Assembly: GCF_033153115.1 (NCBI RefSeq)
Contig: NW_026889803.1
Span: 12,586,001 to 12,650,000, forward strand
Reading direction: 5' to 3'
DNA: 64,000 bases
From: Saccostrea echinata
Lineage: Eukaryota
Shown one piece after another: positions 2,661 through 63,510 of this stretch; position 1 is the stretch's first letter, and each line of letters opens with the position of its first letter. The notes below the pieces were generated by a model. That model did no database searches, had not been told where the DNA came from, and saw nothing but the letters and a program-made list of their open reading frames with translations. Position numbers and translations under genes: made by a program.

Positions 2661-2899
2661 GTTGGCCGCATCAGGATAATGATTTGAAGGACTGGGGATT
2701 CATAATTGGCGTACTAGGAATACATGTATTTAATTGTTAAAAATATGTAGACTTCCTGAGCATGACTACCCTAGCATAAACATATGAATGTCTATTTGAT
2801 GTAAACTGTAAAAGGGTGGGTTATATTTGGTATTTTCCATTTTTTTTTCAAATATAAATAAGAAAAAATCATGCTCTTAAAACTCTGTTTTGTTTGCAG

Positions 2900-3087
2900 T
2901 GCATTCCAACGTGATTTTTCATTGGTATTTGTCATCGATTATGACGTCACATTCCTTAGTATGCTTACGTTGTGTTGTGGTTACCTCTCACTCTAGCGAC
3001 ATAAGTCAAATTAATCGGACGCATTCTTGCAACGCTCCCGTTTTTTCTGAAAATTCAGCTGCTCAGAGTAAAGAATTAACATAGAAG
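2900..3087 (+). promoter_or_regulatory. Conserved 5' block of gene A (promoter/5' UTR) with perfect CRE and reverse CCAAT
   Basis: TGACGTCA at 2942-2949 and ATTGG at 2921-2925. The block aligns with 59298-59472 upstream of paralog B, and both motifs are retained there. Confidence 0.5.
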
Positions 3088-6000
3088 ATGCATGAAAGTA
3101 CAGATATGAGGGTAATGCCTCAAGCTGTTTGTTTTCTTTTGTGAAAAATCATTTAGAACTGATTTCATTAGTAATACATATTTTCTCGGGGAGGGATGAG
3201 AGTGGGGAAGAGAGATGTAAGGGGCTTTACTGAGGATATTCTGACATCGTAGCACCCATTCTTTCACACACACACCCATTGTCAGTATCTACTGGCTTTT
3301 TTTTTTATTATTGTACATGTATGTGTTTGCTTTTGCCGGAGGAACTCGTATGAAATCATGACTGTATATTTTATATTTATTTTATAAGATTAGTAAATTG
3401 ATGTCCATCTTTTGTTGCTCATTATTTAGGTTTCAAAATATACTATACATTTATAATAAAGTAATTGAAATAAATATAATGCAATAAAATTCTTTCTTCC
3501 CAATAGGTTAAAAGAAACAGTTTTTCGTATATACTTGGTATGGAATAGAAAAGCAAAATATTTTCCTAGCTTTACATTATTTTGGACGTTGTTATTGACA
3601 ACGTCAATTTGTTCTAGCTAAATACATCATGTAGTGCACGAAGAATGTAGGAATTTTAGGAGGGGGGGGGGGTAAATATATTTTTTACAAGTTTCATAGT
3701 TTTGAATTTCTTAAATTGCAAAACTTTAATGTAACACAAGCAAAGATGAGGGTGTTATCAGATCTCTCACAAGGATTTATTATGCTGAAAATTGATTGAA
3801 ATTTTAGTTCAAAAGGCAATGTTTTGACGGTGATATAATATAGCCTATACATAGTTTATGACTATTTCTAACCAAAAAGAAAAAATGAATGATTTTCTTT
3901 GGAAGGGGATGGGGTGCGGGTGAGTAGTGATTACTGAGTTGAGTTGACTAAAAACAGACTCTGCGAACATATGCAGATTCTTGTATTTGCGACAAATTTT
4001 CAAAATAAACAATAAAGTAAGAAATAGTCAGGAAATCGGAGGAATTATCATGAAACTGTGTATTTAACAAATTGTCCTCAACACATCAAATGAGCACTTA
4101 AGCATGTTAGCCTATTACAATAAGTACTGGATTTTATTTATAATTTATAATCCCTCATTTACAGATCCAGAGATAATTCAGGTGCATGTTTATTGTCATG
4201 TATGTTATCAAACAGCTTAAAAAAAAGACTCCTTATAACTAAAAACAAGTACATACATGTCAGACATAATAGTATCGTTTTTGAAGGGCGGGGGGGGGGG
4301 TAATGAAAACTTACCTGAAAAACTTTAACAAGCAAAAAAATAAAAATTAAATAAAAAAAAAATAAATAAATAAATTGAAAATCCTTTTTCGTAGAGGTGA
4401 GGATAGGGGTTGTTCCAACTTTCCTTCACAACCTAATTATCAAATTATATTAAATACATTACCAAACTACCATGATTTAACCATGCTGCACCAAAAAGTT
4501 GGGGCGGTCTTTCAATGAACGTTTTCAAAAGTAAAACGTTATCTTTGGAAAATAGTGGGGGGGGGGGGGGGGAGCCCCCTCCCATTGTACTAAGTGCCAT
4601 GGGCACGTAGTACAATGTTATGCTCTTTAATACATTTCAGAAGTGTGACGATCCAGCCAAAGCCTCGCCAGAAACCACTACTCCGCCATCCTTCGACGAG
4701 GTACGGTACAGAATTTTCATATACAAGTACAGCTTTATATTCGAAATGTAATTTTACAAACATGTAAAATTATTATGATCATAACCATTTGTAATAATGA
4801 ATGGCTGGCATATGAGCGTATCCTTTTCTCTGTTTTGTAGGTTGTTGCCAAGTGGAGAAAGAGGCCATGGAGATACAACAGAGTCTGGCGGAAAGACCAG
4901 AAATGGACAAGAGAGGTGAATATAATATTTATACAGCTTTATATTCATAAATAACCGGTAAATGGATACATTGCCATTTTAACAGATAATAATTAAAATG
5001 CTGTTTTAGAAAAAATTCTGATACTAAATGCAAGCTTTTGATAACTTGATAAACACATCTATAAAGAGAGAGCGAGGGGGGTGGGGGTAACATGATGGAA
5101 CACTTTTTTGATTATATATAAGCCATAGATCAAAATTACATGCACCTCCTTTGATTTTAGGGACTGACCCCTTCCGAACATCAGAAGGCGCCAATTGTCT
5201 CTAAGGAACAAAGTGATCAACCTACACGGGTGGTACCTGTACCCAAACAGGTGTGTTGAATGATAGTCAATCAATAAAGTCTCATTGTGTTCATCATCCA
5301 TTTAATGTTTTTAATCCACCTGTAAAAGTGATAGATATGTAAGAAATTACAGCAAGTACATGATAATGATTTTTTTCTCAGAAGCTTGATGATCTCTCCA
5401 AAGAACTGGAAACCACAACTTCACCACCCTGGCCTGATGAGGTACGCTGTACAAATTTGACTAAATAATGTGATGGTTAAAATCAAAACAGGTGTATGTA
5501 ATTCATAGACATTTATTTGAAAGTGTAAGATTAGTTTATCCAATGTTTAGGTACTTTTTGGTTATTAAAAGTATTAATGTTCATAATACATTCTTTGTAT
5601 TGTAGGTTGTTCCCAAGCGACGAAAGAGACCCTGGAGGTACAACAAGGTCTGGAGTAAAGATCGGAAATGGACAAGAGAGGTGATATTCATCAACTTGGA
5701 AGGGGGGGGGGGGGTGACAATCTAAAATAATGAATAAAGAAAAGAATTGAATAGAATAATTATGCGAATAAAATAATTATGCGGTATTAATATGTAAATG
5801 GAGATTTTACAATTAAAAAAATAATTGTTATAAAGAAACATTTGTGATAAATGAAACACACTTCAGATAAATGGATATTTTTTAAACGCATCTTGGAGAG
5901 AGAGAGAATATGAATCATAAAAGAATCACTGAATGAAATAAACATAGTGTATTTTAGGAGCAGACTCAGCCACAGAAAGTACAACCCTCCGCCCCGGTAC

Positions 6001-9000
6001 AAAAGGAGCAACCCACAAAGGTGGTACCAGTCAGAGCTCCCAAACAGGTACAATTGTAATTAATCAAGTGTATATTACCATGGAAACTTTATCTTTTTAC
6101 ATTTTAATCATATGAAGGTCGATAACCCGTATGACTGAATTTTTTTGGTTGAAAAAAAAAATCCACCTTCCTCATTGTATTGGGTTAGTTAAGGATTGGG
6201 GGTTTGAAACTGCCTCCCAAAACAACCATTTTATAGCCTATCCTTACATGAAAAAATATAAAGGTTTTACAGTATTATGAACTTATTTTTTAGCCTGAGC
6301 CACCCAAGTTTTTGAGAAGATACTGGCGAATCAACAGGTTTTGGAGGAAGGACATGGTGTGGACAAAAAAGGTAAACATACAATTGTCCTCTGCGAGTTG
6401 GACAGAAATTAAATCTTCTCAACATAATTATAAAATTTTGAGTCGTATATATCTTTATATCAAGAAACCATGTTTATATTAATATTATTACCAGTTCTCT
6501 GAGTTTAGAAATATAAACTTTCGAACATGGCGGGACTCTCAGACAACTTTGAGATATCTGAGAGCTCTAAATATCGAGTTTAGAATCCGTGATTGTAATG
6601 ATGTTGGGATGGTCGATTCACCCATTTTGCAAGTTATTCGACATATCGGTGATCGAGATATCGGACTTTTAACATCAATTCTCTGTAAGGACCAAAATTT
6701 TACTGTAGGGCTGTGGCACACACCATGAGCGATTTTCATGAAACTTTTTCAGTTGATTAATGCCCATACACTATGACATAATCAACATTCAAAATTAAAG
6801 TTACTACCTTGGTTGCCATGGTAACGGGCCAATATAGATTTTGTCCCCATTTACTCTCAATTCAAGCATAAAAATGCTATATACTTGATTTCTTGTGGTT
6901 TAATCATCTTTATTATTTTGAGATAATTCATACATTATATGAATAGAACAAATGAAGCACTATATAACACAATAAAAAAAATTCTACAAGTCACCTGCAA
7001 ATTCTTCAATTGATGGCTCAAAGATGACCAAATTCTTACATTTTGAAAATGGTCGTTTTTACCCTATATTTCAAGAAGTCTTTCAAGAAATGCAGGCAAT
7101 TCAAGAAAAAATCACCTGAAATTTTAAAAACACCATAATAATATTAGTTAACTTTTATGAAAAGTGGAGTGGGGATTTTTTTCGTTTTCGGTATTTTTAA
7201 CTTCGAAAATTGGCATTTTGCCAAATAATATTTTGTTCAAAATGTTACTAGACACTGGTTGTTTTATAAAATTTCTTTTCCAAACATTTTTCTCACTAAT
7301 AAATAAGACAAACGGAATGATTAGTAAATATCATTAAAGATAATAAATAGGATAAAACAAAATTAAATGAATTATTATTGTTTCTCTATGATCCTTTACA
7401 AAGGGCAGATAACTCAAAATCTAATGAAAATTAGCTATTCAACTTTTCACTGGAACTTATTTCAGTAAACAACATTTTCAAATACTAGGTAAAAAATGGA
7501 AAAAGATAATGGATTAAAACTCTAATGATACTTTTCAACCAAAAATGATAAATAAATAATAAATTATTAGTTTTTCATGCATAGGTAGGTAGATACAGTG
7601 TATTAATTTAGCAGGTTTGAAATTTGATAAGCTAATGTTAATTTCCTCCTTTTAAATTTTGCTTGTTCCCAGATGCAAATCTTTAGATGTCAATTTTATT
7701 TGGTTAAAGAAATTTAGAATTATTTAGACTGACCATAAATTAACACCCCATTAAAAATAATACCATTAATGTATAGTCTTACAATCAGAAAACATACACA
7801 TATTCATGTGAATATGTATAATTTTATCGTTACTTTTAAAAACAGTTTGTTTTTTTTTTCAAATTATTAATCAAGCAATAATCTACATCTAAACATTATC
7901 CAAAATGTGTATTTAGAGATAAACAAAATGTAGAAAATAGCTGCTATATAGCAATTTTGTAGACAATAGGAACAGCTAGGCTTGATGTTTCCATGATTTC
8001 TCTTTACATCAGAGGTTGACCATTATGTGGTGTTGTGTCTGACCAGTCAAGAAGAATTTTAAATGGGTTTGAAAAGTGATACTTGAAATAATCATCTTCA
8101 TCTTTTCCCCTGAAAAAAAAACATACATGTATACTTTAATCAAAAATCAATTGTTTAATATCTACTACATTTTTCATGTGATAACAAATACAAGTATATA
8201 AGCATATCTATTTTTATCAAAATGTATATAATACTAAGCTAGTAGTTAGTATTTACATCTTGAAATAAATTGCCTCAAAATTCCTGCATGTGTACTTAAA
8301 AAGCAGGCTTCATATCACAGGTGCTTGGGGACGGGACCCCCCCCCCCCCCCCCCCATAAAAATTCATACTCTCGGATACTAAAAGAGAACTTTAGTATCA
8401 GAGATTATGAATTTTAATAAAAGGTTAGTTTTAGATTATATTTTGGATTTTTGAATTGTAATACTTTGTGAATGTGTAATAGAAATGTATTTTATTATAA
8501 AAAAAGTCGGGGAGAACCCTTGGAGTATGGAACGCGGGGGAGGGGGTCCCATTCCCAAGCACCTGTGCTTCATATTTTATTGCCTTTAACGCAGACAACA
8601 ATGCACCAATTAATGAATACCTTAACTAAATCATTAATAAATACAATACATGCCGCAGACGTATGTAGCGCTAATTCATGATTACTCCATACCCAGTGAT
8701 TGCGCTAAATTTTGAATACGCCAATTTATGTACACATACAGTATTTTCAGTGTAGCCAATCGCAAGATAAAAGTAACTGAAACAATTTACCATCACCTAC
8801 TCCAAAAGCTGTCCCCATGCTCAAACAGAATCTTCTCCAAAAGAATATTGTTCAGGGAAGATACTGTCCAATGTTCAATTCTCACAGTCAATTGCAAGGT
8901 TTCTGTCTCCATTAGTTAATTTTGTAACTGCCTCCTGCTTCTGGTATATAGCCTTTGTGTTGAATAATGATGATAAAAACACAAGAATAAAGGTTCTTTC

Positions 9001-12000
9001 CCAAGCATTTGCAACTATATCAATCATTACTGTATACTGGATATTTCTATTTGTAGTTAATTTATACATATAGGCCTATGCAATTTTCTTGTATAAATCA
9101 TATGCATTAGGGATAATCNNNNNNNNNNNNNNNNNNNNNNNNNNNNNNNNNNNNNNNNNNNNNNNNNNNNNNNNNNNNNNNNNNNNNNNNNNNNNNNNNN
9201 NNNNNNNNNNNNNNNNNNNNNNNNNNNNNNNNNNNNNNNNNNNNNNNNNNNATACATATTCAATGTATGAACTTGTACTCACAAGCGAAACTTTCCTGAA
9301 CAAGTTCTGATTGAATATTTATAAATTATACCCACCATAAATTTGCTTGTGAATTAAGATTATCTTAAAAGTTTGATAAAGCATACATCAAGTGAAAAAA
9401 GAAAATTGAATTAATTAAATTATAGTGTACTTACAGTTGCTCATATATCCTTCATCGTTGTACTATTTGAGTGCAACCTTTCATAAGTGATGCTCCTGTG
9501 TCACAGTCCTAAATTATATTATATTTTTATCTTATTAGTTTGTATTTATAGCTGCAGTTAAATATGTTTGTTCTTTTACAGTGAATCGGAATTATATGAC
9601 TTCTTTTTAGGCTAAATTTTTTTTTTATGTGTTTCCGTTAAGTCGACCATCTCTAATTTTTACCCACCACCAACTACTTTTTTGGCCAAATTAGATTTTA
9701 AACTGTACCAATGGCGGATTTAGAGGGGGGTCCAGCCCCCCCCCCCCTTTGTGTCCAAAATATACATCAGATTTCAGATTTAATAAATCAATTTTTTTGG
9801 TGTGGCCTTGAGCCAGTATCCCGAGACCACACTGGTCCCCCCCCCTTTTCAAGATTCCTGGAACCGCCACTGTGTACAATGTTTCCAAAAATATATAATT
9901 TTTTTATATAGCCTTGTGTATATTTTTTATTACATACAAACTTACATCTTCTAAAATATTCTCCTCCTTTTGATAAACTTTGTTGTTATGATTTGCCAAA
10001 GTAAGTTGCTTTCTGAAGCAAGCAAAAATTCCTATAATGCAAATATATTAATAAGATGTATATATCTGGAATATCCTGCTAACATGGTGATCTTTGAATA
10101 TAGACCAATTAAGTCTATTATATAAAAAAAATTATTTAAAATGTCAATTTATTTGAAAAAAGCTTCTTACGTGTAGTTTTTATACAAAATGAATATTTGA
10201 AAACATTCAAATTCATACCTGTGCCTAGGGTTGTTCTAACCATTCCCACTGACTGCCCTATCTTCTGCTTGTTGTTTTCCTCCAATTGCATCTTGTATTT
10301 TTCTCATGGGTTTTAGAGTACATGGAATCCCACATGATGGGAATGCAAGTCAGACCTCATAAAATTTGTTTCAATATTTTGCAAAGTGAATTTGACATTA
10401 AAAATCTATTATCATAATAAAGACCTGTACATCATTATCAAGTTGAATGCTGAGAAAGCAGTGTCTCCTTCATTTGATGAATTCCTTTGCCATTCACACC
10501 CGAATTCCAATTTAAAAAGTTGAAAAACACATCATTTTTCCGTTATTGTTTCATGTTTATTTTTCTGGCGTCTGTTTTTGCCACATGTTGTTATAAACTT
10601 CTTTAGACTTCAATACAGGAGAGTCAACAAAGGGAAATAACACCAGTTTAATTTTTTGTCTTCAGTGCAAAAGAGTCAGCAAAGGGAAATAACTCTAGGT
10701 TAATTTTTAGGAAAAGTTATAATTTGAGGGGATTGGAATATGACTTTTAACTGATTTCCCCACCTCAAATCTTTTTGCATCTTTTAGATCTAAGCTTGAT
10801 CTTACTAAAAAGATCTTTTTTCTAAGTTTCAATTGCCTGCAAAATTTAATATGCATATCAAGAAATAGGCACCTTTGTATTCATTTTTATGACAAATTCA
10901 TGTAAATTGATCTGTATCATATTAAAAACCTTGGGTTAAATTGAATAAAATTTAGATGCACAGAAACTTTGATTACTTAGCTGTAAAATGAAACCCATGT
11001 TATGTTCATAACTTTCCTACATTAAGGAAGCACGGAATTATTTTACATGGTGATGACAATCAGGTCAGTTTTGCCATGACAAAATATTTCAAAGTCGTTG
11101 CTATGGAAACCAAGGAGGTACTGTCCAAAATTTACCCACCAATAGTCTTTATATAGGGCACTCTCTAATATTATAGTGATAAAATAAAATTCCATGATAG
11201 TGCGTGGCCAAGCATTTTTGGTCCTTACAGAGAATTGATGTTAAAATACACAAAACAAACCTGAGTCCAAACTGCAGCAGCAAAATTGCACTGTGCCAGC
11301 ACAGCAGGATCAAGATGATGCTGGCAAGCAGTTTTGTGGAATTCTGGGTAAAAATATCAAAGGTAAACTTTTCAAAAATTTAGATTTGATCATTCTTTTT
11401 AGAACTTGTATATTCATCGTGCATGTAAATTGCTAAATATATGTGTATATTGATCTATGGTCAATTTCTATTTTAGGAAACTAATTTAAAATAATTACTT
11501 TACTATTGTTTTGGGAGGACTTATGTGGCATTAATAGTCTTTATTGATCTAAAAAAATGAGCAAATAAGCAGAGAAAAATGTCTATGGCTCGATAAAGAA
11601 AGTCATGTAGGATCATCAAAATTTGCTACATATCCCAAGTATTGAAATTACTTATCTATGAATTAGTATGCACACACAAAGGGCAAAAATGATCATAATA
11701 TAACACAATTTTCCCATTTAAGAGGATCCTTGCTACATTTTTTGAAAGTATATCTTCAGAGTAGGTGTTAAAAAAGTAGAGCAGTAGAAACACATTTTTT
11801 CGGTCAACAAATTAAAACGTGAAGCGAAGATTCATAATGTCCTAAAACTACACTTTTATGACACAACCTTTATATATTTCTGAGAAATACATGTATTTGA
11901 AGTCCATTATTCAAGGTCCATATCACAAACAAGATCTTAATACCATAGCCTGTTAATGAGTTGCGTGGTCTAGTGGTTGACATGTCAATCTCTAGGAAAA

Positions 12001-13544
12001 GAAATGATATGTTTTTTATTGCTATTTTTCATATTTTTATTGTTTTTTTTTTTATTGGATTCAAACCCCCAGGAAAATGTTTAATGCCTGGGTTGAAACC
12101 CCAAACAAAACCTTTTTAAACATAGAATAATTTTTGCAGAGAGAATTCTCCACAAAGAATTTTCAAACCTTTCAATGATCAGATTATTGCTTCAAATACT
12201 TCGTTCACAAAGACAATTTAATTTTTATACACTTGAAGCTATAAGCATTTTCACGTCTAATTCGTCCATGTTCTTTTTAAAAGATAGGTCTTTGGGCTAG
12301 GGTTTTGGCACTATCCAGGAAAAATTGTTTATAGTATATTGTTAACTTTTAATTTCCTTATTCTTTTCAGTAGTCCATAACAGAGCCATCAAAGACTAAG
12401 GATGTTGATGACGTAAGTATCACATACATGTATAAAGGAAAGCATGATAGATAAACTTGCTTCCAATATTTCATTGATAGATTTGTACATGGAATATGTA
12501 GAATTGTACATTATAGAATGTATGCCATGCACATTCTTCATAATATTACACTGAAAATCATTCGTATGATGAATGAATGTAATATGAATTTCAACATGTA
12601 AATCTTCTTTATTATATCACTAGATACAATATCTAATTTAGATATACACGGAACAAATTGTTGTTATCATTTGATATATAAATACTGAATGTAAATTATA
12701 AACTAAGGAGTATTAATCACACAGAATGACACATCAGAAGCATGTACCCAAGAAGTGACTGCATTGTCCTCCACTGACGAGACTCGTCCTAATCCTATAG
12801 ATGATGGACAGAAAGCTGTAGTTGAAAGGGTACGTATAATTCAATGATTTTCATTAAGTAAACTTTTTTTTCTTTCAGTTAGCGTAACCTTTTCAAGAAC
12901 TTATGAATAAACCTTGGCAATTTATGTGTTTCAATAATATTTCCTTCTGACACAATTAAGTGTTGAAAATCTTTTCTAGAACATGTAAATACATTAGTTT
13001 CATGAATTAATACCAAGTGTGTTTTGTTCAGATAATTGATGGACTGACAGAGTTTGAGAAGTTAGCAGACGACAAGGTAGAGGGGAACATCCCCGGGGAC
13101 AGCAGTGGTGATAGCAATGGGCTCCAACGGGTTAGCGACTGTTCTTCAACCCCACTCACAGACATACAGACAGAGGATAAGGTATGGAAAGATTATAATA
13201 ATCAAACACATCTATATATTTATTATAATATATTTGTTTTATTAGTGTTTGTGTCTGTGATATATATAATTTCGTTTTGTTTATAGGACAAGTCTACCCG
13301 GAAGCGGAAGAGGCCAGATTGCTCTTTTACGCCTTCAAAGAGACTGAAGTCTGCATTGGTATGCATAATTACTTTTTTTTAAACTATACGTTTAAAGTCT
13401 TTTTCATTGCTGTCCCCTTTGATGGAATAAATTTCACTGATTTCTAATTTGATTAATTGTATAATTGTGTTTTCTACGTAGTTTGCACCAGCCGAGATTG
13501 AAGTACAGTGCCTGGTGCGGAAGTTTGCCGCCATGAGCGTGTAA
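3088..13544 (+). CDS. Uncharacterised low-complexity protein with three Trp/Arg-rich repeats, NLS-like and NES-like motifs (gene A, about 326 aa)
   Basis: Phase-0 GT-AG exons: 3088-3111 MHESTDMR; 4641-4700 KCDDPAKASPETTTPPSFDE; 4841-4915 VVAKWRKRPWRYNRVWRKDQKWTRE; 5161-5250 GLTPSEHQKAPIVSKEQSDQPTRVVPVPKQ; 5382-5441 KLDDLSKELETTTSPPWPDE; 5606-5680 VVPKRRKRPWRYNKVWSKDRKWTRE; 5958-6047 EQTQPQKVQPSAPVQKEQPTKVVPVRAPKQ; 6294-6371 PEPPKFLRRYWRINRFWRKDMVWTKK; (possible 11231-11362); 12374-12412 SITEPSKTKDVDD; 12725-12829 NDTSEACTQEV...KAVVER; 13032-13181 IIDGLTEFEK...QTEDK; 13287-13358 DKSTRKRKRPDCSFTPSKRLKSAL; 13482-13544 FAPAEIEVQCLVRKFAAMSV*. The first 8 exons are conserved with splice sites in paralog B. 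Confidence 0.8.
4261..4601. mobile_element. Degenerate MITE-like insertion in intron 1 of gene A
   Basis: Poly-G tracts near both ends and decayed termini (cagacataatagtatc ... gtactaagtgccatg). Absent from the aligned intron of paralog B, whose flanks (actc.ttat..aactaaaaa / atg..cttta) join directly. No clean TSD seen. Confidence 0.45.
8316..8567. mobile_element. hAT-like MITE (252 bp) nested in the 4.6-kb element
   Basis: TIR CACAGGTGCTTGGG / CCCAAGCACCTGTG with a perfect 8-bp TSD CTTCATAT (8308-8315, 8568-8575). Confidence 0.9.
9119..9251. other. Assembly gap (133 N)
   Basis: Run of N. Confidence 1.
9709..9872. mobile_element. MITE (164 bp) with CARTGGCGG termini and 5-bp TSD, nested in the 4.6-kb element
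   Basis: Left CAATGGCGGATTTAG, right reverse complement CAGTGGCGGTTCCAG. TGTAC duplicated at 9704-9708 and 9873-9877. Confidence 0.8.
11551..12277. mobile_element. ~720-bp MITE-like element, copy 1 (gene A intron)
   Basis: Colinear similarity to 61751-62456 (ttgaaatta..., aaagggcaaa.atgatcat, gtggtctagtggtt, tgcctgggttgaaaccc, ttgaagctata.gcatttt) and decayed TIRs. Confidence 0.6.
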
Positions 13545-47900: not shown

Positions 47901-50900
47901 TATGAAGGGTTTAATATAACGTAGTTTTCGCATCTTTTAACAGTATTTCTTTAGCAAGATAAACTCTCATCATTTCACAATGAACTTGCGCAATAATATT
48001 AGCTTCATTTCTTTGATCGTTGTTCTTACATCGTTCAAAGGGAGATCATTTGAATACAGCCAGAGTTACCTTATGCAAATTTCACAAAATAACAGTTAAG
48101 CATTTGAAAGATTAGTATAAATGCGAGATTTCTGAGGGTGGTGGTGGGATAATCTCTAAAAGGTTATTAACAAAAATTCTCTGCTTCTTTCTAATAAAGA
48201 AGGCACATTCACGCACATGTATCGGAAAGTGCACATGCATGCATAGTGCTGCAAATGCAGCCTGTGTACCCAAAATGTGCACCATCAACAACACTCGTAC
48301 TTATTTCAAAGTTTCACAAATTGATTCATTTTTTTTTTCAAAACCTTGGATATTTTAATCCTAAGATACTTTCCTTTATTTATACAAATGAGTTATCTTT
48401 GTAAATCAGAATTGGGACGGAGTTAGTTGCATGAAAATGGTTTCAAAATAAAACTTTTTCTTTACAGTGTTTGAGAATGCGATTTTTGTAGGAAGATATA
48501 GCAATTGCAAAGGTGTGAGAGAGTAATTGCACGTGCTCAGTGCAGTTCCAAACAATATACACACAACAAGTTCCCGATTTCTTTCTGCTGTGAAGAAGTA
48601 AATACAAGGTCATTGTTGCAGTCTTTGAAAAGTAACTGTTTTGTCAGCTGAGCTCTAGTCATCACGTGACCAGTAACCGTTCAGCGCTATCAATAGAAAA
48701 CGTGAAAGCTCTTATAATTACCGACGCTTTAGACTTATGTAGAATTTTGTGTAGATGCATGTATAAGATCATTGGCCTAGTCATGATTTGCATATTGCTC
48801 TTTTTAGGAGCATTTTTATTTCTAAATTTTAAAATTATTAGTGCATAAATAATTTTAGAGAGTTCTACTGTTATCTATTTGTCATTGTGTTCTGCAGGTT
48901 TCATGCATTTCGCCCGACCCAGTTAATCAAAATTAAGTCAGTTTGTACCTAAATATATTATTTCAAAAGAAATTCATGCATGGGCAATGAAATTCAAAGA
49001 CACGTACTGAAATACGGAATAAAAAGGGGGGTCTTTTAGCCGATAAACATTTTCATATTATTTTTGACTTAATTGAAGATAATCCGTATTATTGAATATT
49101 TCTGACTTAATGTATCGTTAAGAGTGTTTTTTAAAAATGTTTTTCCTTTACTGACAATGTACTACAAAATGTATTGGTAAAAACTGACATGCATTAAAAA
49201 TAAATATCTGCGGATTTCTGTTTGTTTGTTTTATTTGTTTTTTTACTTTGAAAAAAAATTAAGTACCTCTTCTCTACCTCTTATGAAGGGTTTAATATAA
49301 CGTAGTTTTCGCATCTTTTAACAGTATTTCTTTAGCAAGATAAACTCTCATCATTTCACAATGAACTTGCGCAATAATATTAGCTTCATTTCTTTGATCG
49401 TTGTTCTTACATCGTTCAAAGGGAGATCATTTGAATACAGCCAGAGTTACCTTATGCAAATTTCACAAAATAACAGTTAAGCATTTGAAAGATTAGTATA
49501 AATGCGAGATTTCTGAGGGTGGTGGTGGGATAATCTCTAAAAGGTTATTAACAAAAATTCTCTGCTTCTTTCTAATAAAGAAGGCACATTCACGCACATG
49601 TATCGGAAAGTGCACATGCATGCATAGTGCTGCAAATGCAGCCTGTGTACCCAAAATGTGCACCATCAACAACACTCGTACTTATTTCAAAGTTTCACAA
49701 ATTGATTCATTTTTTTTTCAAAACCTTGGATATTTTAATCCTAAGATACTTTCCTTTATTTATACAAATGAGTTATCTTTGTAAATCAGAATTGGGACGG
49801 AGTTAGTTGCATGAAAATGGTTTCAAAATAAAACTTTTTCTTTACAGTGTTTGAGAATGCGATTTTTGTAGGAAGATATAGCAATTGCAAAGGTGTGAGA
49901 GAGTAATTGCACGTGCTCAGTGCAGTTCCAAACAATATACACACAACAAGTTCCCGATTTCTTTCTGCTGTGAAGAAGTAAATACAAGGTCATTGTTGCA
50001 GTCTTTGAAAAGTAACTGTTTTGTCAGCTGAGCTCTAGTCATCACGTGACCAGTAACCGTTCAGCGCTATCAATAGAAAACGTGAAAGCTCTTATAATTA
50101 CCGACGCTTTAGACTTATGTAGAATTTTGTGTAGATGCATGTATAAGATCATTGGCCTAGTCATGATTTGCATATTGCTCTTTTTAGGAGCATTTTTATT
50201 TCTAAATTTTAAAATTATTAGTGCATAAATAATTTTAGAGAGTTCTACTGTTATCTATTTGTCATTGTGTTCTGCAGGTTTCATGCATTTCGCCCGACCC
50301 AGTTAATCAAAATTAAGTCAGTTTGTACCTAAATATATTATTTCAAAAGAAATTCATGCATGGGCAATGAAATTCAAAGACACGTACTGAAATACGGAAT
50401 AAAAAGGGGGGTCTTTTAGCCGATAAACATTTTCATATTATTTTTGACTTAATTGAAGATAATCCGTATTATTGAATATTTCTGACTTAATGTATCGTTA
50501 AGAGTGTTTTTTAAAAATGTTTTTCCTTTACTGACAATGTACTACAAAATGTATTGGTAAAAACTGACATGCATTAAAAATAAATATCTGCGGATTTCTG
50601 TTTGTTTGTTTTATTTGTTTTTTTACTTTGAAAAAAAATTAAGTACCTCTTCTCTACCTCTTATGAAGGGTTTAATATAACGTAGTTTTCGCATCTTTTA
50701 ACAGTATTTCTTTAGCAAGATAAACTCTCATCATTTCACAATGAACTTGCGCAATAATATTAGCTTCATTTGGTTGGTTTGGTTTTTCTTTCTTTAAAAA
50801 AAATTAAGTACCTCATCTCTACCTCTTATGAAGGGTTTAATATAACGTAGTTTCCGCATCTTCTAACAGTACTTCTTTAACAAGATAAACTCTCATCATT

Positions 50901-55575: not shown

Positions 55576-55889
55576 TAACAAAACAAACCAAACAGCCAGA
55601 CAAACAAAACAAGAAACAGGCCAGCAGGAAGCAATTTCAGATTGAGGGGTACTACCAACCAAAAAAAAAAGGGGGGGGGGTAATAAGACGTAATTATTAA
55701 AGGGGCACATCCATAAAGTAGCTTTGTTTTCTATAGTATACCGATATTATCGGTAAAATTATTGGGGAGGGGGTGTCCTACGGCCATGAGAATTTTTTGA
55801 TGATAACAGGTAACTCTTTAGTTCACAGCTAAAATTTCTGCTTTAATTCTGCTTAAATTTTTGGCTGTCATATTTAATATATCATAACC

Positions 55890-59274: not shown

Positions 59275-59472
59275 TTGCCTACCTTCAATATTTTCAGTGC
59301 ATCCAACGTGATTTTTCATTGGTGTTCGTCATTGATTATGACGTCACATTCCTTAGTATGCTTACGTTGTGTTGTGGTTACGTTTCACTCTAGCGACATA
59401 AGTCGAATTGATCGGACGCATTCTTACAACGCTCCCGATTTTTCTGCAAATTCTACTGTGTTGAGCAAAGAA

Positions 59473-62400
59473 ATGACATCAAAGACGTACGAAAGTAAAG
59501 ATAAGAGGGTAACGCCTCACTTTGTATGTTTTCTTTTGTGAAAAATCATTTAGTACCGATTTTATTTATAATACATACTTTCAAGCGGGGGGGGGGGGGG
59601 GTACGGGGTTCTACGGAGAATATTCTGCTGGCATGGTTTGTAACAATTCCTTCACACACACTCACACCCTTTTAAGTATCTTCTGGTATTCTAGTTATCA
59701 AAATACGCGTCTTTGCTTATGTAAAACATGATTGTACACAATGAATCTTATCATGATTGTATCGATATATTGTATCTATAGATCACTTGACCGCTTTTTT
59801 TGCTTATGGTGCACACATCTGTACAATTGAATTCATTTTATACTAGACATTTAGATAAATATAGTATAATCATTCAGTTAAGTGTTCCTTGGATAAAAAA
59901 AGGCAGTTTGCAGAACATAAATCTGTCATGGAATTAAAATAATACAGAATAGAAAACTATTTTCCTAGCTTTACATAAGGACGTCGTTATTGACAACGTC
60001 AACTTGTCCTAGCTTTGCATAAAAATGGACGTATTGTGGAAAAAAAGGCGGGGGGGGGGGGGGTTGGATAGGAGCAAAAAGGGGTTGTCAGAGCTCTTAC
60101 AAGGGTTCATTATGCTGAATATTTATTAAAGATGCAGTTCAAAAGATAATTTTTGACGATGTTTTAGATAAAGTTTATAAATATCTCTAGCAAAAAAAAG
60201 GGGGGTTGAAGGTTTTTTAAAAGGGGGTGTGGGTTTGGATCTGCTACCGTTGTAGTTACTACATGTTCTTACTCAACTAAAAACAGACTCAGTCAACAGA
60301 TGCTTCTGGTTCTTGTACTTCAGATAAATTTCCAAACTTATATACATTAATATTCATTGAATATATTTAACCACATAAAAAAGAGGAATTATATACTCTC
60401 AACAATTTTTAGCAAATCTTAAGCATTAAAAAAAACAACAACAAAATAACCTAGTACATCTTCTATATTTACCAGTACTAGAGCAGTTTTACTAGATGTT
60501 TTGAACAAACGTTTTTCTTGTGTCTGTTTTAAAGGTCGGGAAGAAATCAAATAAGCACTGAACAATTATATTTTTTTAATTAAAACTCCCACACGTAGAG
60601 ATCTCAGGTATCATATCACCATGTCATGTAAGAGCAAAATGCACGCATGTGTATTTAGTTCTACTTCAGTTTTCTTTTTTATTATTTCATCCCTTTTTAC
60701 TGAGAAAATTATGTTTATTTTCATGGATATTCTAAACCACTCCCAGAAAACTGAAAGACTCATTATATAACTAAAAAATGTCCTTTACTTTATTTTAGAA
60801 GTTTGATGATCCAGCCAAAGCCTCACAGGAAACCACCACTGCACCATCCTCTGACGAGGTACGCTGCTGAATTCCCCGAACTTAACAAAATGTGAATATT
60901 TTCAGTTTTATACTAGATATTGAACGTGGAAACAGGTTTGAAGAATATAATAATTACAATAATAATCATTTGTAATGAATGAATGGTATATGAGCGTATC
61001 GTATTCTCCGTTTTATAGGTTGTTGTCAAGCGGAGAAAGAGGCCATGGAGATACAACAGAGTCTGGCGGAAAGACCAGAAATGGACAAGAGAGGTGAATA
61101 TAATACTTATAATACAGCTTTATATGAATAACCGGTAAATTATCTTCGCTGAGAAGGGGTGTAGATCAGAAACCCTTGGCTAGCGAAGATCCTATTAAAT
61201 GGATACATTACAATTTTAACAGATAACAATTATATTGCTGACTAAGAAAAAGTCTTGATAATTAAAACAAGTTTATGACAACTTGATAGATACATCAACA
61301 AAGAAAAAAATAGAGAGAGAGAATGGGGTAAAGGATAGAGAGAGGGGAAGGGTAAATGATGGAACACATTTTTTGATTGAATATATAAGTCACTGATTGA
61401 AATGACCTCCTTTTAATTTAGGGACTGCCTCCTTCCGAACATCAGAAGGCGCCATTTGTCTCCAAGGAACAAAGTGACCAACCTACACAGGTGTTACCAG
61501 TTCCAAAACAGGTGTTTAAATTATAACCAATCAATAAAGTCTCATTTTGTTCATCGGCCATAATTTTCTTAATACACCAGTTAAAAAAGTAGATTTGTTA
61601 GATATTATAGCAAGTATACGAAAATATTTTTTTTCCACAGAACTTTGATGATCCAGACAAAGACTCATCAGAACCCAGACCTTCACAGTCCTGGGCGTCT
61701 GGAGAGGTATGGTACAGATTGATTAACTTCATATCATGCCATGGTTTTGAAGAAGATGGGCGAACCAGCCGAGCAAAATGCCTATTTTGTGACATACAGC
61801 AGAGTGAAAAAATAAATCTCAATTATGACAAAATTTTCTTTGATATTTCATTTAACATTGATATGTACTTTTTGTAAAATCTACACAATTTGCAATAATC
61901 TCACAAAGATTGAAATTATTCTTCTATCAAATAACATACACACACCAAAGAGGGCAAACATGATCATTTTTTCATACTAAATCGCAATTTTTCCATATGA
62001 ATGGGTTTTCGCTCCATTTTTTTGAAAGATTATACTCAAATATGCGTAAAGCTGTTCACATTTCGGTTAACAATTTATACACGAAGCAAAGACCAATTAT
62101 ACCTTAAAAATATGGCACAACATTCGTGTATTTCCGAGAAATATCCATTTAGTCAAGGGTCATAGCACAAACTTGATTTAAATGCCGCTATTTTTCATGA
62201 GCTTTGTAGTGTAGTGGTTAGCATGTTGGTATATATGAAAAAAACTGATACTAGTACTCAGGATTTTTATGCTTGGGTTTGAACCCAAAGAACACCACTT
62301 TTTAAAATCATTAAATAATTTTTGTTGAAAGAACTTTCCTTTGTCATAATTTCAATAATAAGAACTTTACTCTTAATACTAAATTTTCAAACTGAATATT

Positions 62401-63510
62401 TTTTCTACCTTTTGAAGCTATATAGGCATTTTGCACGCCTTGTTTGCCCATCTCTTTTTTTGCTCAAAATCAAATTAATATCCCAAAATAGGTGTATGTA
62501 ATTCATAGACATTTAATTCAAAGTGTAAGATTAGTTTATCCAATGTTTAGGTAATTTTTGGTTATTAGAAGTATTGATGTTCATAATACATTCTTTGTCT
62601 TGTAGGTTGTTCCCAAGCGGCGAAAGAGACCCTGGAGGTACAACAAGGTCTGGAGAAAAGATCGGAAATGGACACGAGAGGTTTGATGATATTCATCAAT
62701 TTGGAGGGGGGGGGTGAAAAACTAAAAATGAATAAATAAAAGAATTGAATGTTTTATTATCTGATAGAATACTCTGAATTAGTATAAATCATTGAATGAA
62801 ATAAGCATGGCATAATTTAGGAGCAGACTCAGCCACAGAAAGTTCAACCCCCCACCCCTGTACAAAAGGAGCAACCGACAAAGGTGTTACCAGTCACAGC
62901 TCCCAAACAGGTAATTAACCGAGTGTATGGTACTACAGATACTTTATCTTCTTGCATTTTAATCATTTAGAAATCGATAGGCTGCTATGAAATCCTTCAA
63001 GATAAACCTGAAGAATTACAATTATATCTCGGTACGATAGATTACATCGTCGGATACCTACTGGTGATCTCGTCCTTTTACTCATCATCACCCGCAGGTA
63101 TCCGACAATGGATAGTCTATTATAATATGTCGAGATTTCTTGCTGATTTTCAACATTTCTTTATGTAATAATTCTTATTTACAGTAAACTTTCAAATTCC
63201 CCATGAATCAAAGCTGTGATAGCTTCAATCAAAATATTATTAAAACTTATTGCCATTTGCGAATTCCAATAGTTACCATTTTGTCCTCGCAAGCTTCTAA
63301 ATTTAAAAAAAGGTCAACCTTCTTCCACTATGTCAAAGACTGGGGGTTTGAAACTGCAAAACAACCCTTTTTATGGCCCATCCTTACATGAAGAAATATA
63401 TAGATTTTATAGCATTATGACTTATTTTTTAGCCTGAGCCACCCAAGTTTTTGAGAAGATACTGGCGGACCAACAGGGTTTGGAGGAAGGACATGGTGTG
63501 GACAAGAAAG
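59473..63510 (+). CDS. Paralog B of the Trp/Arg-repeat protein (5' part; continues beyond the window)
   Basis: Phase-0 exons 59473-59508 MTSKTYESKDKR (in-frame upstream ATG also at 59338); 60799-60858 KFDDPAKASQETTTAPSSDE; 61019-61093 VVVKRRKRPWRYNRVWRKDQKWTRE; 61422-61511 GLPPSEHQKAPFVSKEQSDQPTQVLPVPKQ; 61641-61706 NFDDPDKDSSEPRPSQSWASGE; 62606-62680 VVPKRRKRPWRYNKVWRKDRKWTRE; 62821-62910 EQTQPQKVQPPTPVQKEQPTKVLPVTAPKQ; 63433-63510 PEPPKFLRRYWRTNRVWRKDMVWTRK. All GT-AG, no stops. Confidence 0.82.
61142..61190. mobile_element. ~50-bp foldback mini-element in a gene B intron
   Basis: ATCTTCGCT..AAGGG...CCCTTGGCTAGCGAAGAT. Absent at the homologous site in gene A (ccggtaaatggatac, about 4955). 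TAAAT occurs on both sides of the insertion. Confidence 0.7.
61751..62456. mobile_element. ~710-bp MITE-like element, copy 2 (gene B intron)
   Basis: TIR AGATGGGCGAACCAGCCGAGCAAAATGCCTAT vs the reverse complement of ATAGGCATTTTGCACGCCTTGTTTGCCCATCT. Absent from the homologous 164-bp intron of gene A (5442-5605). Confidence 0.75.
63045..63110. repeat. Internal hairpin of an intronic insertion in gene B
   Basis: CATCGTCGGATACCTACTGGTGAT ... ATCACCCGCAGGTATCCGACAATG. The surrounding ~350 bp does not align to the gene A intron. Confidence 0.7.

What the first reader, a model, noticed from the sequence alone, without database searches (positions are those of the whole stretch)
3088..13544. Hidden tandem gene family encoding an unrecognised W-x5-W-x5-W basic repeat protein
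Seen: a gene made entirely of 24-150 nt phase-0 exons, largely invisible to the ORF track. It has three copies of R-x-W-R-x-N-[RK]-[VF]-W-[RS]-K-D-x-x-W-T-[RK]-[EK], each encoded by its own exon and separated by acidic/Thr-Pro and Gln/Pro/Val linker exons. A paralog (59473-63510+) keeps all 8 visible exons, splice sites and frame, while its introns have diverged and gained different insertions. All nine motif Trp residues are invariant between paralogs, while one linker exon is largely rewritten. I do not recognise the motif as a named domain. Inference: a lineage-specific, selected, multivalent binding module (RNA/DNA or protein) in a disordered scaffold.
Basis: partly seen in the sequence, partly recalled or inferred. 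Interest (0 to 1): 0.8.

Follow-up and report, generated by a model that had tools for sequence, protein, structure and literature searches.

The report
Oyster-only gene family with tryptophan motif
This is a real, transcribed and spliced gene family found so far only in oysters, built from tiny exons that encode three copies of a strongly conserved basic tryptophan motif matching no described protein family; automatic annotation partly misses it and its function is untested.

Summary
Copy A (3088-13544) and copy B (59473 onward) have the phase-0, AG/GT-bounded mini-exons described. All seven introns between the first eight exons of A appear as exact GT..AG joints in contigs of four public runs from two studies.

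The genome (Saccostrea echinata, by a RefSeq protein on a contig of identical length) holds 10 intact-looking copies and one decayed copy, all on one chromosome.

The Trp exons are the most constrained part. dN/dS is 0.05-0.14 between the two chromosomal clusters.

A profile of 27 motif copies, searched against 1.84 billion proteins, finds credible relatives only among oyster proteins (Saccostrea, Magallana/Crassostrea). All are named "uncharacterized" or carry names that no domain match supports. Pfam, PDB sequences, the ESM Atlas and the literature give nothing.

AlphaFold sees a disordered chain with one confident C-terminal helix. The motif alone is modelled as a helix.

Each protein also carries a bipartite NLS-like exon and a terminal helix that fits the export-signal pattern.

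My best reading is a nuclear, possibly shuttling, disordered protein whose three Trp/Arg motifs are multivalent binding sites, most likely for RNA. That function is inferred, not shown.

The assembly gap lies inside an A-specific transposon in intron 8 and does not touch coding sequence.

The parts
2897..3087 (+). Conserved promoter/5'UTR block of copy A, with ATTGG (CCAAT-box complement, 2920) and TGACGTCA (CRE-like, 2942)
   Evidence: About 94% identical to B 59295-59472, while sequence further upstream is unalignable. Motif positions. A 28-nt core is also exact in the paralogues at 13.50 and 13.53 Mb.
3088..3111 (+). Copy A exon 1 (MHESTDMR). A uses an ATG 4 codons downstream of B's start, which in A reads TTA followed by an in-frame TAG.
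   Evidence: Joint 3110->4640 GT..AG in run X1.
4641..4700 (+). Copy A exon 2, acidic/Thr-Pro linker (net charge -3)
   Evidence: Joints on both sides.
4841..4915 (+). Copy A exon 3 = Trp motif 1 (VVAKWRKRPWRYNRVWRKDQKWTRE, net +8)
   Evidence: Joint 4913->5159 in all four runs.
5161..5250 (+). Copy A exon 4, Gln/Pro/Val linker
   Evidence: Contigs with 0 differences (records 16, 26).
5382..5441 (+). Copy A exon 5, acidic linker (the exon rewritten in B)
   Evidence: Joints 5247->5379 and 5439->5604 in X2-X4.
5606..5680 (+). Copy A exon 6 = Trp motif 2 (VVPKRRKRPWRYNKVWSKDRKWTRE, net +9)
5958..6047 (+). Copy A exon 7, Gln/Pro/Val linker
   Evidence: record 9, 0 differences.
6294..6371 (+). Copy A exon 8 = Trp motif 3 (PEPPKFLRRYWRINRFWRKDMVWTKK, net +7)
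   Evidence: Joint 6045->6292 in X1, X2, X4.
6673..11240 (.). Not part of the gene product: A-specific 4.57-kb element in intron 8 with perfect 25-nt terminal inverted repeats and TTAA on both sides. It contains the assembly gap 9119-9251.
12374..12412 (+). Copy A exon 9 (SITEPSKTKDVDD). In A only, a second acceptor CAG lies 3 nt upstream. Its use would put TAG in frame and end the protein after motif 3.
   Evidence: Junction to exon 8 not verified by reads.
12725..12829 (+). Copy A exon 10, acidic
13032..13181 (+). Copy A exon 11, acidic (net -8). Found only in the 12-13 Mb cluster at this similarity.
13287..13358 (+). Copy A exon 12, bipartite-NLS-like (DKSTRKRKRPDCSFTPSKRLKSAL, net +7)
   Evidence: (present downstream of every W cluster).
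13482..13544 (+). Copy A exon 13, terminal amphipathic helix (FAPAEIEVQCLVRKFAAMSV) and stop
   Evidence: The homologous residues 351-367 of P0002 are a helix at pLDDT about 80.
59295..59472 (+). Conserved promoter/5'UTR block of copy B (ATTGG 59317, TGACGTCA 59339)
59473..59508 (+). Copy B exon 1 (MTSKTYESKDKR)
60799..60858 (+). Copy B exon 2
61019..61093 (+). Copy B Trp motif 1
61422..61511 (+). Copy B exon 4
61641..61706 (+). Copy B exon 5 (66 nt, rewritten)
62606..62680 (+). Copy B Trp motif 2
62821..62910 (+). Copy B exon 7
63433..63510 (+). Copy B Trp motif 3. B's exons 9-13 lie beyond the window end (L036 7162-8834).

Best explanation
**What is shown.**
- Copies A and B belong to a multi-copy gene family found so far only in oysters: 10 intact-looking loci and 1 decayed locus on one chromosome of Saccostrea echinata.
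- Each gene is a chain of symmetric phase-0 mini-exons. A cassette of [acidic 60-nt exon][75-nt Trp exon][90-nt Gln/Pro/Val exon] is used twice. A third, 78-nt Trp exon follows, then an acidic tail, an NLS-like exon and a terminal helix exon.
- The product of A is about 326 aa with net charge +12. By relatives' models it is intrinsically disordered.
- The 5' eight exons are transcribed and spliced as predicted.
- The Trp motif, core [KR]-R-x-W-R-x-N-[RK]-[VI]-W-x-[KR]-D-x-x-W, is under strong purifying selection.

**What is inferred.**
- The KRKRP...SKRLK exon takes the protein into the nucleus (my estimate 0.7).
- The terminal L-x3-F-x2-[MLVFW]-x-[LV] helix is either a CRM1-type export signal or a partner-binding helix.
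- The three basic Trp motifs are disordered until they bind and have helical propensity. They act as multivalent docking sites.
- Their most likely ligand is RNA or another nucleic acid, bound in the manner of arginine-rich motifs: Arg/Lys on the backbone, Trp stacking on bases (about 0.4).
- The acidic exon before each motif could mask it.
- Copy number and motif number change by duplication of the symmetric exons and of whole genes.
For: **Gene structure.**. All 29 motif exons checked in this genome keep AG/GT and frame.

**Splicing.** Seven exact GT..AG joints in 4 runs from 2 studies. Motif hits within any locus are at least 583 nt apart, against about 225 nt expected in a spliced copy. 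So the joints are not from a retrocopy in this assembly.

**Family and synteny.**
- 30 motif hits fall in 10 loci.
- The NLS-like exon lies 1.2-7 kb downstream of every motif cluster, on the same strand.
- The exons are colinear with XP_062582563 (P0002), which joins the motifs to the NLS and helix in one model. The M. gigas and C. angulata models do the same.

**Selection.**
- W exons have omega 0.05-0.14 at dS 0.75-1.35 between the 12-13 Mb and 39-40 Mb clusters.
- Other exons: e7 0.09-0.75, e12 0.33-0.42, e13 about 1-2.
- Between A and B, W exons are 95-97% identical and introns 57-86%.

**Restriction and novelty.** (oysters only). (no Pfam). (no PDB sequence). (Atlas). (no paper).

**Disorder and helices.**
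- AF2 of P0002 gives mean pLDDT 46, with a terminal helix at 351-367 at about 80.
- The isolated motif with a 27-sequence alignment is one helix at pLDDT 83.

**Charge blocks.**

**No signal peptide.** The N-termini are hydrophilic.

**NLS and NES readings.** These are matches to published consensus patterns recalled from memory. They hold in every full-length member listed.
Against: - No experiment or expression atlas bears on function. The runs are coded and carry no tissue label.
- The runs are only guessed to be RNA, although their spliced contigs argue for it.
- RefSeq models in S. cucullata and Magallana also include short forms that read into the intron after motif 3, and forms holding only the 3' half. 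The long form may therefore not be the only product.
- In copy A alone, a CAG acceptor 3 nt upstream of the conserved TAG acceptor would bring a stop into frame.
- In the full-length AF2 model the motifs are below pLDDT 50. AF2 tends to make helices of short peptides, so the helix is weak evidence.
- In a helix, Trp at i, i+6 and i+12 point 120 degrees apart, not along one face.
- Many amphipathic helices fit the NES pattern by chance.
- The Trp could serve protein binding as well as RNA binding.
Confidence: 0.45

Rival explanations
1. The Trp motifs are short linear motifs that dock onto a conserved protein partner rather than onto nucleic acid. One candidate is the minor NLS-binding site of importin-alpha, whose class-3 signals begin KR-x-[WFY]. 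Another is any hydrophobic Trp-binding pocket. The family would then be a multivalent adaptor, sponge or regulator of that partner.
For: - [KR]-R-x-W opens nearly every motif copy in S. echinata, and most copies in the other oyster genera.
- Invariant Trp in disordered chains is typical of protein-docking motifs.
- The chain is disordered.
- The selection pattern fits any specific ligand.
Against: - The second half of the class-3 NLS consensus (xxAF) is absent.
- The invariant N, the second Trp and the D are not explained by it.
- The protein already has a classical NLS-like exon.
- Net charge of +7 to +9 per 25 aa is higher than in most protein-docking motifs.
- No partner is known.
Confidence: 0.3
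2. The W-exon half and the 3' half are two separate transcription units, or the main product ends after motif 3 by intron read-through, polyadenylation or the CAG acceptor in A. In that case the motif protein lacks the NLS and helix.
For: - The one S. echinata family protein my searches returned, LOC133204871, holds only the 3' half of a paralogue.
- Several S. cucullata, M. gigas and C. angulata models stop in the intron after motif 3.
- A has a CAG/TAG tandem acceptor at exon 9.
- The exon 8 to exon 9 joint of A was not observed.
Against: - The two halves are adjacent, on the same strand and in the same order in all 10 loci.
- Full-length models joining them exist in three species (P0002, P0020, P0006, P0022, P0023).
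- Depth drops right after 6371 in all runs, so read-through is not the main form in those samples.
- The 158-aa model starts at an internal Met, as a truncated prediction would.
Confidence: 0.12
3. A polyprotein precursor of secreted cationic Trp-rich antimicrobial or cell-penetrating peptides, with acidic spacers neutralising each basic peptide.
For: - Alternating acidic and basic blocks.
- Trp/Arg-rich 25-mers resemble known antimicrobial peptide chemistry (from general knowledge).
- Tandem gene amplification is common for immune effectors.
Against: - No signal peptide in any member. The N-termini are hydrophilic and charged.
- An NLS-like exon and a terminal helix are conserved.
- No paired processing sites flank the motifs.
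- The Gln/Pro/Val linkers are themselves conserved.
Confidence: 0.03
4. Decaying or non-functional duplicates: exon-like remnants kept similar by recent duplication or gene conversion, not by selection on a protein.
For: - Within the 12-13 Mb cluster the W exons differ little even at synonymous sites (dS 0.04-0.11), against flanking-intron divergence of 0.20-0.28. This would fit gene conversion.
- One locus at 41.18 Mb is clearly decayed, with stops.
Against: - Between clusters, synonymous sites are near saturation while the peptide is kept (omega 0.05-0.14).
- The motif is conserved across oyster genera.
- All 29 exons keep frame and splice sites.
- Spliced transcripts exist.
Confidence: 0.03

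Closest known systems
RefSeq 'uncharacterized' oyster proteins: S. cucullata XP_062582563, XP_062588612, XP_062614344; M. gigas XP_065922564 and LOC105347336; C. angulata LOC128165938; C. virginica LOC144625298
   Same: True relatives. They share the same Trp motif in 2-6 copies, the same Gln/Pro linkers, the same KRKRP...KR.K exon and the same terminal helix, and are colinear exon by exon.
   Different: Motif number varies. In Magallana most copies keep only the first two Trp (W-x2-N-R-V-W-R-K-D). None has a described function or family. Names such as 'SRRM1-like', 'mucin-2-like', 'TRIO and F-actin-binding protein-like' and 'HIF1A inhibitor' have no domain match behind them.
Arginine-rich motif (ARM) RNA-binding peptides (HIV Rev and Tat, phage lambda N)
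   Same: Short, very basic stretch in a disordered chain with helical propensity. It has key Asn and Trp among Arg/Lys. In Rev the motif is combined with nuclear import and a leucine-rich export signal. This is a resemblance from general knowledge.
   Different: No sequence homology. Lys is as frequent as Arg. There are three Trp at a fixed 6-residue spacing. The motif is repeated three times with long linkers. RNA binding is untested.
Trp-containing docking motifs of disordered proteins (GW182/TNRC6 W-motifs, Ago hooks)
   Same: Several invariant Trp in a long disordered chain, with multivalency.
   Different: Those Trp sit among Gly, Ser and Thr, usually in an acidic or neutral context. Here they are embedded in Arg/Lys with fixed spacing and an invariant N and D.
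Multivalent arginine-rich linear motifs that drive nucleolar partitioning through nucleophosmin
   Same: At least two basic motifs separated by acidic or neutral linkers in a disordered nuclear protein.
   Different: That class needs no Trp and no fixed motif sequence. Nucleolar localisation is untested here.
Trp-Arg ladders of thrombospondin type-1 repeats and the cytokine-receptor WSXWS motif
   Same: Periodic Trp interleaved with Arg.
   Different: Those have W-x2-W spacing, sit in disulfide-rich secreted domains and form strands. Here the spacing is 6, there are no Cys and there is no signal peptide.

Membership tests
Oyster Trp-motif family (unnamed; type XP_062582563) | Two or more copies of W-x2-N-[RK]-[VI]-W-x-[KR]-[DNG] | tested here: met
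   Three copies each in A and B. A profile of 27 copies hits P0001-P0004 at E 1e-17 to 1e-29 and P0006 at 5e-4.
Oyster Trp-motif family (unnamed; type XP_062582563) | C-terminal KRKRP...KR.K exon followed by a terminal amphipathic helix exon, colinear with the motifs | tested here: met
   Exons 12 and 13 align to P0002 residues 325-348 and 349-368. Present downstream of all 10 loci. The exon 8 to exon 9 junction of A is not verified by reads.
Any Pfam-A family | hmmscan match at or near the gathering score | tested here: not met
   No match at E<=10 for 10 single exons, nor at E<=1 for five full-length relatives.
Arginine-rich motif (ARM) RNA binders | Short Arg-rich peptide, unstructured alone, that adopts a helix or hairpin on RNA | tested here: inconclusive
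   Net +7 to +9 per 25 aa. Low pLDDT in the full-length context, but a helix at pLDDT 83 for the isolated motif. Lys is about as frequent as Arg.
Arginine-rich motif (ARM) RNA binders | Specific RNA binding | not testable with these tools
   Needs EMSA, anisotropy or CLIP.
GW182-type W-motifs / Ago hooks | Trp flanked by Gly/Ser/Thr in a non-basic context | tested here: not met
   The flanks are R, K, N, V and D.
Class-3 (minor-site) importin-alpha NLS, KR-x-[WFY]-x-x-A-F (consensus recalled from the literature) | Full consensus | tested here: not met
   KR-x-W is present, but it is followed by R-x-N-R, never x-x-A-F.
Classical bipartite NLS | Two basic clusters separated by about 10-12 residues | tested here: met
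   RKRKRP-x8-KRLK in exon 12, and the equivalent in all paralogues and relatives. This is a pattern match only; import is untested.
CRM1 nuclear export signal, PKI class (hydrophobic spacing 2-3-2-1, recalled from the literature) | Five hydrophobic positions with that spacing in an exposed segment | tested here: met
   V-QC-L-VRK-F-AA-M-S-V in A. The same spacing holds in the paralogues, S. cucullata and M. gigas. Helix at pLDDT about 80 at the chain end. This is a pattern match only; export is untested.
Secreted cationic antimicrobial-peptide precursors | N-terminal signal peptide | tested here: not met
   Exons 1-2 read MHESTDMRKCDDPAKAS. The relatives also start with charged, hydrophilic N-termini. 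Judged by eye; no predictor was run.
Thrombospondin type-1 repeat / WSXWS Trp-Arg ladder | W-x2-W spacing in a Cys-rich secreted domain | tested here: not met
   Spacing is 6 and there is no Cys in the motif.

The most novel reading that the evidence does not exclude
The 25-aa Trp/Arg exon is a new class of sequence-specific RNA-binding module. With their NLS and export-signal-like helix, these proteins would be cellular Rev-like shuttling adaptors. They would carry particular RNAs, for instance transposon or germline transcripts, between nucleus and cytoplasm. Tandem gene and exon amplification would then reflect an arms race or dosage demand in oysters.
Probability: 0.12. Interest if true: 0.7.

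Novelty: new variant of a known kind. Interest (0 to 1): 0.45.

Why it matters
- It adds a clean, testable case of a taxonomically restricted protein family whose only strongly conserved part is a 25-residue motif encoded by its own symmetric mini-exon.
- It shows that standard annotation can miss such genes. The one S. echinata family protein my searches returned keeps only the 3' half, and relatives carry names that no domain match supports.
- The motif is short enough to synthesise and carries three Trp as built-in fluorescent reporters. Its ligand could therefore be found quickly.
- If the ligand is RNA, this would be a new cellular arginine/tryptophan RNA-binding motif.
- If the function turns out to be mundane, the value is mainly a corrected annotation of about 10 oyster genes and a motif profile for finding more.

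Tried and rejected
**Searches that found nothing.**
- Pfam on single exons and on full-length relatives.
- PDB sequence search with the motif profile and with P0002.
- ESM Atlas with P0002, whole and C-terminus: no usable feature hit, and only meaningless single-helix structure matches.
- Literature search for gene identifiers and motif strings: 0 papers.
- Earlier findings of this scan near the window or by words.

**Other dead ends.**
- M. gigas P0006 as a six-frame query on this genome found no match. It is too divergent at exon level.
- P0005, a 1013-aa ENA protein with 15 repeats of SWRLNPVWYDD, is not basic and has a different architecture. Its Pfam 'hits' are repeat artefacts, so I treat it as a chance resemblance summed over repeats.
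- Beta-meander, Trp-zipper and left-handed beta-helix ideas for the 6-residue period get no support from AF2, which gives coil in context and a helix in isolation.
- The CDK site T-P-S-K next to the NLS is not conserved. The 39-40 Mb cluster has V-P-S-K.
- Fold search was not run, because the models are disordered or a single helix.

**Steps not taken or not available.**
The exons were searched one by one, and natural database proteins served as full-length stand-ins.
- The third word search was not spent. A 44-aa basic C-terminal module could not reach significance in 5.8 billion sequences.

Full report
**1. The observation**

The window is AT-rich animal DNA (GC about 0.32). It is G000:C54:12586001-12650000 of a 923-Mb genome.

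Each is a multiple of three and is bounded by AG and GT.
- Copy A: 3088-3111, 4641-4700, 4841-4915, 5161-5250, 5382-5441, 5606-5680, 5958-6047, 6294-6371, 12374-12412, 12725-12829, 13032-13181, 13287-13358, 13482-13544.
- Copy B repeats the first eight exons at 59473-63510. Its five 3' exons lie just past the window end (L036 7162-8834).

The three Trp exons of each copy align without trouble. Invariant columns among the six are K, R, W, R, N, W, K, D, W, T. In a six-frame translation of all 64 kb, W-x5-W-x5-W occurs six times, and all six are in these exons.

Between A and B:
- the Trp exons are 95-97% identical in DNA;
- the linker exons are 64-92% identical;
- the introns are 57-86% identical, with different insertions;
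- exon 5 is rewritten (60 vs 66 nt).

- A's first Trp exon has an extra Trp.
- A has lost B's start codon (TTA, then an in-frame TAG) and uses an ATG four codons later.

**2. The assembly gap**

The gap at 9119-9251 lies in intron 8 of copy A. That intron is 6.0 kb, against 2.1-2.7 kb in four paralogues.

The excess is one insertion. A 6379-6675 and A 11241-12373 match positions that are contiguous in the introns of B and of the copies at 13.50, 13.53 and 13.92 Mb. The inserted piece (6673-11240) ends in perfect inverted repeats and has TTAA on both sides.

The gap is inside this transposon-like insertion, so frame and exon continuity do not depend on it.

**3. Transcription and splicing**

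One search for runs gave four small runs from two studies. They are guessed to be RNA and are kept as contigs. Laid on 3001-9000, they give GT..AG joints that skip 1529, 140, 245, 131, 164, 277 and 246 nt. Those are exactly the seven intron lengths of my model.
- Four of the seven joints are seen in three or four runs.
- Some contigs match copy A without a single difference (records 9, 16, 26).
- Others differ at 6-11 places and come from paralogues.
- Depth falls right after 6371.

Could the joints come from a retrocopy in DNA? All motif hits within a locus of this genome are at least 583 nt apart, whereas they would be about 225 nt apart in a spliced copy. So the assembly holds no retrocopy, and the spliced contigs argue for RNA.

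What I could not check is the junction from exon 8 to exon 9 and the 3' junctions of copy A. The single read-laying run was used on the 5' part.

**4. The family in this genome**

A profile of the six motif copies finds 30 strong hits in six-frame search. They fall in ten loci, all on contig C54:
- 12.59 Mb (A) and 12.647 Mb (B);
- 13.503, 13.528 and 13.923 Mb;
- 39.767, 39.788 and 39.818 Mb;
- 40.415 and 40.687 Mb;
- weak hits with stop codons at 41.18 Mb.

The NLS-like exon 12 lies 1.2-7 kb downstream of every one of these clusters, on the same strand. Exons 9-13 follow in the same order. All 29 motif exons inspected keep AG/GT and frame.

Variations:
- Most loci have three motifs.
- The 40.687 Mb copy has four.
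- The 13.92 Mb copy shows only two.
- The 41.18 Mb locus is decayed.

Exons 2-3-4 and 5-6-7 are a duplicated 60/75/90-nt cassette. Because every exon is phase 0-0, cassettes can be gained or lost without breaking the frame.

A and B share a 190-nt block just upstream of the start that is about 94% identical. It holds ATTGG and TGACGTCA. Its core is exact in two more paralogues.

**5. Selection**

Between the 12-13 Mb and 39-40 Mb clusters, the 57 core codons of the three Trp exons give dS 0.75-1.35, dN 0.06-0.12 and omega 0.05-0.14.

The other exons are freer:
- exon 7: omega 0.09-0.75;
- exon 12: omega 0.33-0.42;
- exon 13: omega about 1-2, on few sites, with the hydrophobic positions kept.

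Within the 12-13 Mb cluster the Trp exons differ very little even at synonymous sites (dS 0.04-0.11), while flanking intron differs by 0.20-0.28. This could be gene conversion, splicing-enhancer constraint in tiny exons, or noise from about 29 synonymous sites. I leave it open.

**6. Relatives elsewhere**

A 25-position profile of 27 motif copies was read against 1.84 billion representative proteins. Six proteins passed E 0.001.
- Four are Saccostrea cucullata proteins.
- One is a Magallana gigas protein. Its cluster also holds Crassostrea angulata entries.
- The sixth (P0005) is a non-basic 67-aa tandem repeat from an ENA assembly. I take it for a summed chance match.

Word searches with P0002 and with a ten-sequence alignment add more S. 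cucullata, M. gigas and C. angulata proteins and one from C. virginica. No other taxon appears.

All are named 'uncharacterized' or carry names that no domain supports (SRRM1-like, mucin-2-like, platelet glycoprotein Ib-like, TRIO and F-actin-binding-like). None has a Pfam domain.

XP_062582563 (P0002, 368 aa) joins three motifs, the acidic tail, KRKRP...SKRQK and the terminal helix in one model. The window's exons align to it in order.

In Magallana and C. virginica the core W-R-Y-N-R-[VI]-W-R-R-D-x-V-W is kept in some copies. Other copies keep only the first two Trp.

**7. The organism and its annotation**

One hit, P0024, is 'uncharacterized protein LOC133204871 [Saccostrea echinata]'. It sits on a contig of 69,717,260 bases, exactly the length of C54.

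P0024 (158 aa) maps to the 3' half of the paralogue at 39.77 Mb. It starts at an internal Met and omits that gene's three Trp exons. No database protein corresponding to A or B turned up in either word search.

So 'hidden' is fair: the micro-exon half escapes automatic annotation at least in part. For the same reason, absence of the family from the proteomes of other bivalves is weak evidence of real absence.

**8. Structure**

- AlphaFold2 on P0002 with ten family sequences gives mean pLDDT 46. There are only two helices: 183-191, just before motif 3, and 351-367, the chain end, at pLDDT about 80.
- The Atlas's own model of this protein is also poor, at pLDDT 0.40.
- The isolated motif 3 with 27 aligned copies is modelled as one helix at pLDDT 83. 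Short peptides are often modelled as helices, so this shows helical propensity at most.

The product of A is 326 aa with net charge +12. Its blocks are -3, +8, +1, -4, +9, +3, +7, then -15 over exons 9-11, then +7.

**9. How it most likely works**

Shown:
- a transcribed, spliced, selected family found only in oysters so far;
- a disordered chain;
- three conserved basic Trp motifs;
- a conserved basic exon and a conserved terminal helix;
- no hydrophobic N-terminus.

Inferred from published consensus patterns that I recall, not from a test:
- RKRKRP-x8-KRLK fits a classical bipartite nuclear localisation signal.
- The terminal V-x2-L-x3-F-x2-M-x-V fits the PKI-class CRM1 export signal in every full-length member.

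On that reading the protein enters the nucleus and may shuttle.

The Trp motifs are too conserved to be mere charge. The invariant W, N, W, D, W imply a specific ligand. My first choice is RNA or another nucleic acid, by analogy with arginine-rich motifs in which Asn and Trp make the specific contacts (about 0.4). A protein partner is the main rival (about 0.3). Three motifs per chain would give avidity. The acidic exon before each motif could mask it.

Secretion as antimicrobial peptides is unlikely without a signal peptide. Decay is excluded by selection and splicing.

**10. Caveats for copy A**

Besides the transposon in intron 8 and the shifted start codon, A alone has CAG three bases upstream of the TAG acceptor that all paralogues use for exon 9. 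If that CAG is used, TAG comes into frame and A's product ends after motif 3. Only reads can tell.

Some relatives' models also end in the intron after motif 3, so a short motif-only isoform may be real in this family.

**11. Novelty and score**

The family fails membership of every named family I tested. It resembles known kinds: arginine-rich RNA-binding motifs, Trp docking motifs and multivalent basic motifs in disordered nuclear proteins. Its relatives are already in RefSeq, unnamed.

I file it as a new variant of a known kind, with moderate interest. It is solid and undescribed, but its function is open.

Noticed in passing
window 18850-52460: Macrosatellite between copies A and B: about 25 head-to-tail copies of a 1380-bp unit, 98-100% identical. 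The same unit forms arrays on at least seven other contigs, including C9, C22, C47 and C16, and elsewhere on C54, at 73-94% identity. A 165-bp sub-repeat sits at 50617-50936.
   Followed up: partly
window 6673-11240: A 4.57-kb insertion specific to copy A's intron 8, with perfect 25-nt terminal inverted repeats (CATCAATTCTCTGTAAGGACCAAAA) and TTAA on both sides. This is a piggyBac-like target site, but the superfamily was not determined. It holds the assembly gap.
   Followed up: partly
window 7941-8108 and 8790-8952, minus strand: Contigs of three runs join these two pieces with a CT..AC (minus-strand GT..AG) joint, inside the inserted element. No clear reading frame. Positions 8601-8800 are very deep (up to 828), so this is a high-copy repeat.
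   Followed up: partly
window 54961-55710, minus strand: The only ORF of 150 aa or more in the window (249 aa). It is a reverse-transcriptase fragment (Pfam RVT_1, E 4.6e-11), so a retroelement remnant.
   Followed up: yes
G000:C10:7389619-7389868 (L048 4619-4868): A locus on another chromosome has good copies of the NLS-like exon and the terminal helix exon, with splice sites and a stop. It has no Trp motif within 14.6 kb upstream. The C-terminal module may exist without the motifs, or be older than them.
   Followed up: partly
G000:C54:39.77 Mb (L040 3941-9127): RefSeq LOC133204871 (158 aa) covers only the 3' half of this paralogue. Its three Trp exons (L040 3941-4012, 4859-4933, 5625-5702) are not in the model.
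   Followed up: yes
window 12368-12376: Copy A alone has a CAG|TAG tandem acceptor at exon 9. The paralogues have AATAG or CATAG. Use of the CAG would place an in-frame TAG.
   Followed up: no
Trp exons of A, B and the 13.50 and 13.53 Mb copies: Synonymous divergence of the Trp exons within the 12-13 Mb cluster (0.04-0.11) is well below the divergence of their flanking introns (0.20-0.28). Between clusters it is about 1. Gene conversion, splicing constraint or small-sample noise are all possible.
   Followed up: no
G000:C54:41.18 Mb (L047): Decayed family member: motif remnants with in-frame stops (R*RPLRYNRVW, WRYNRV*KRD).
   Followed up: partly
P0005 (ENA, 1013 aa): An unrelated-looking protein with 15 tandem 67-aa repeats, each holding SWRLNPVWYDD. 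It scored E 3e-17 against the motif profile by summation. Origin unknown.
   Followed up: no
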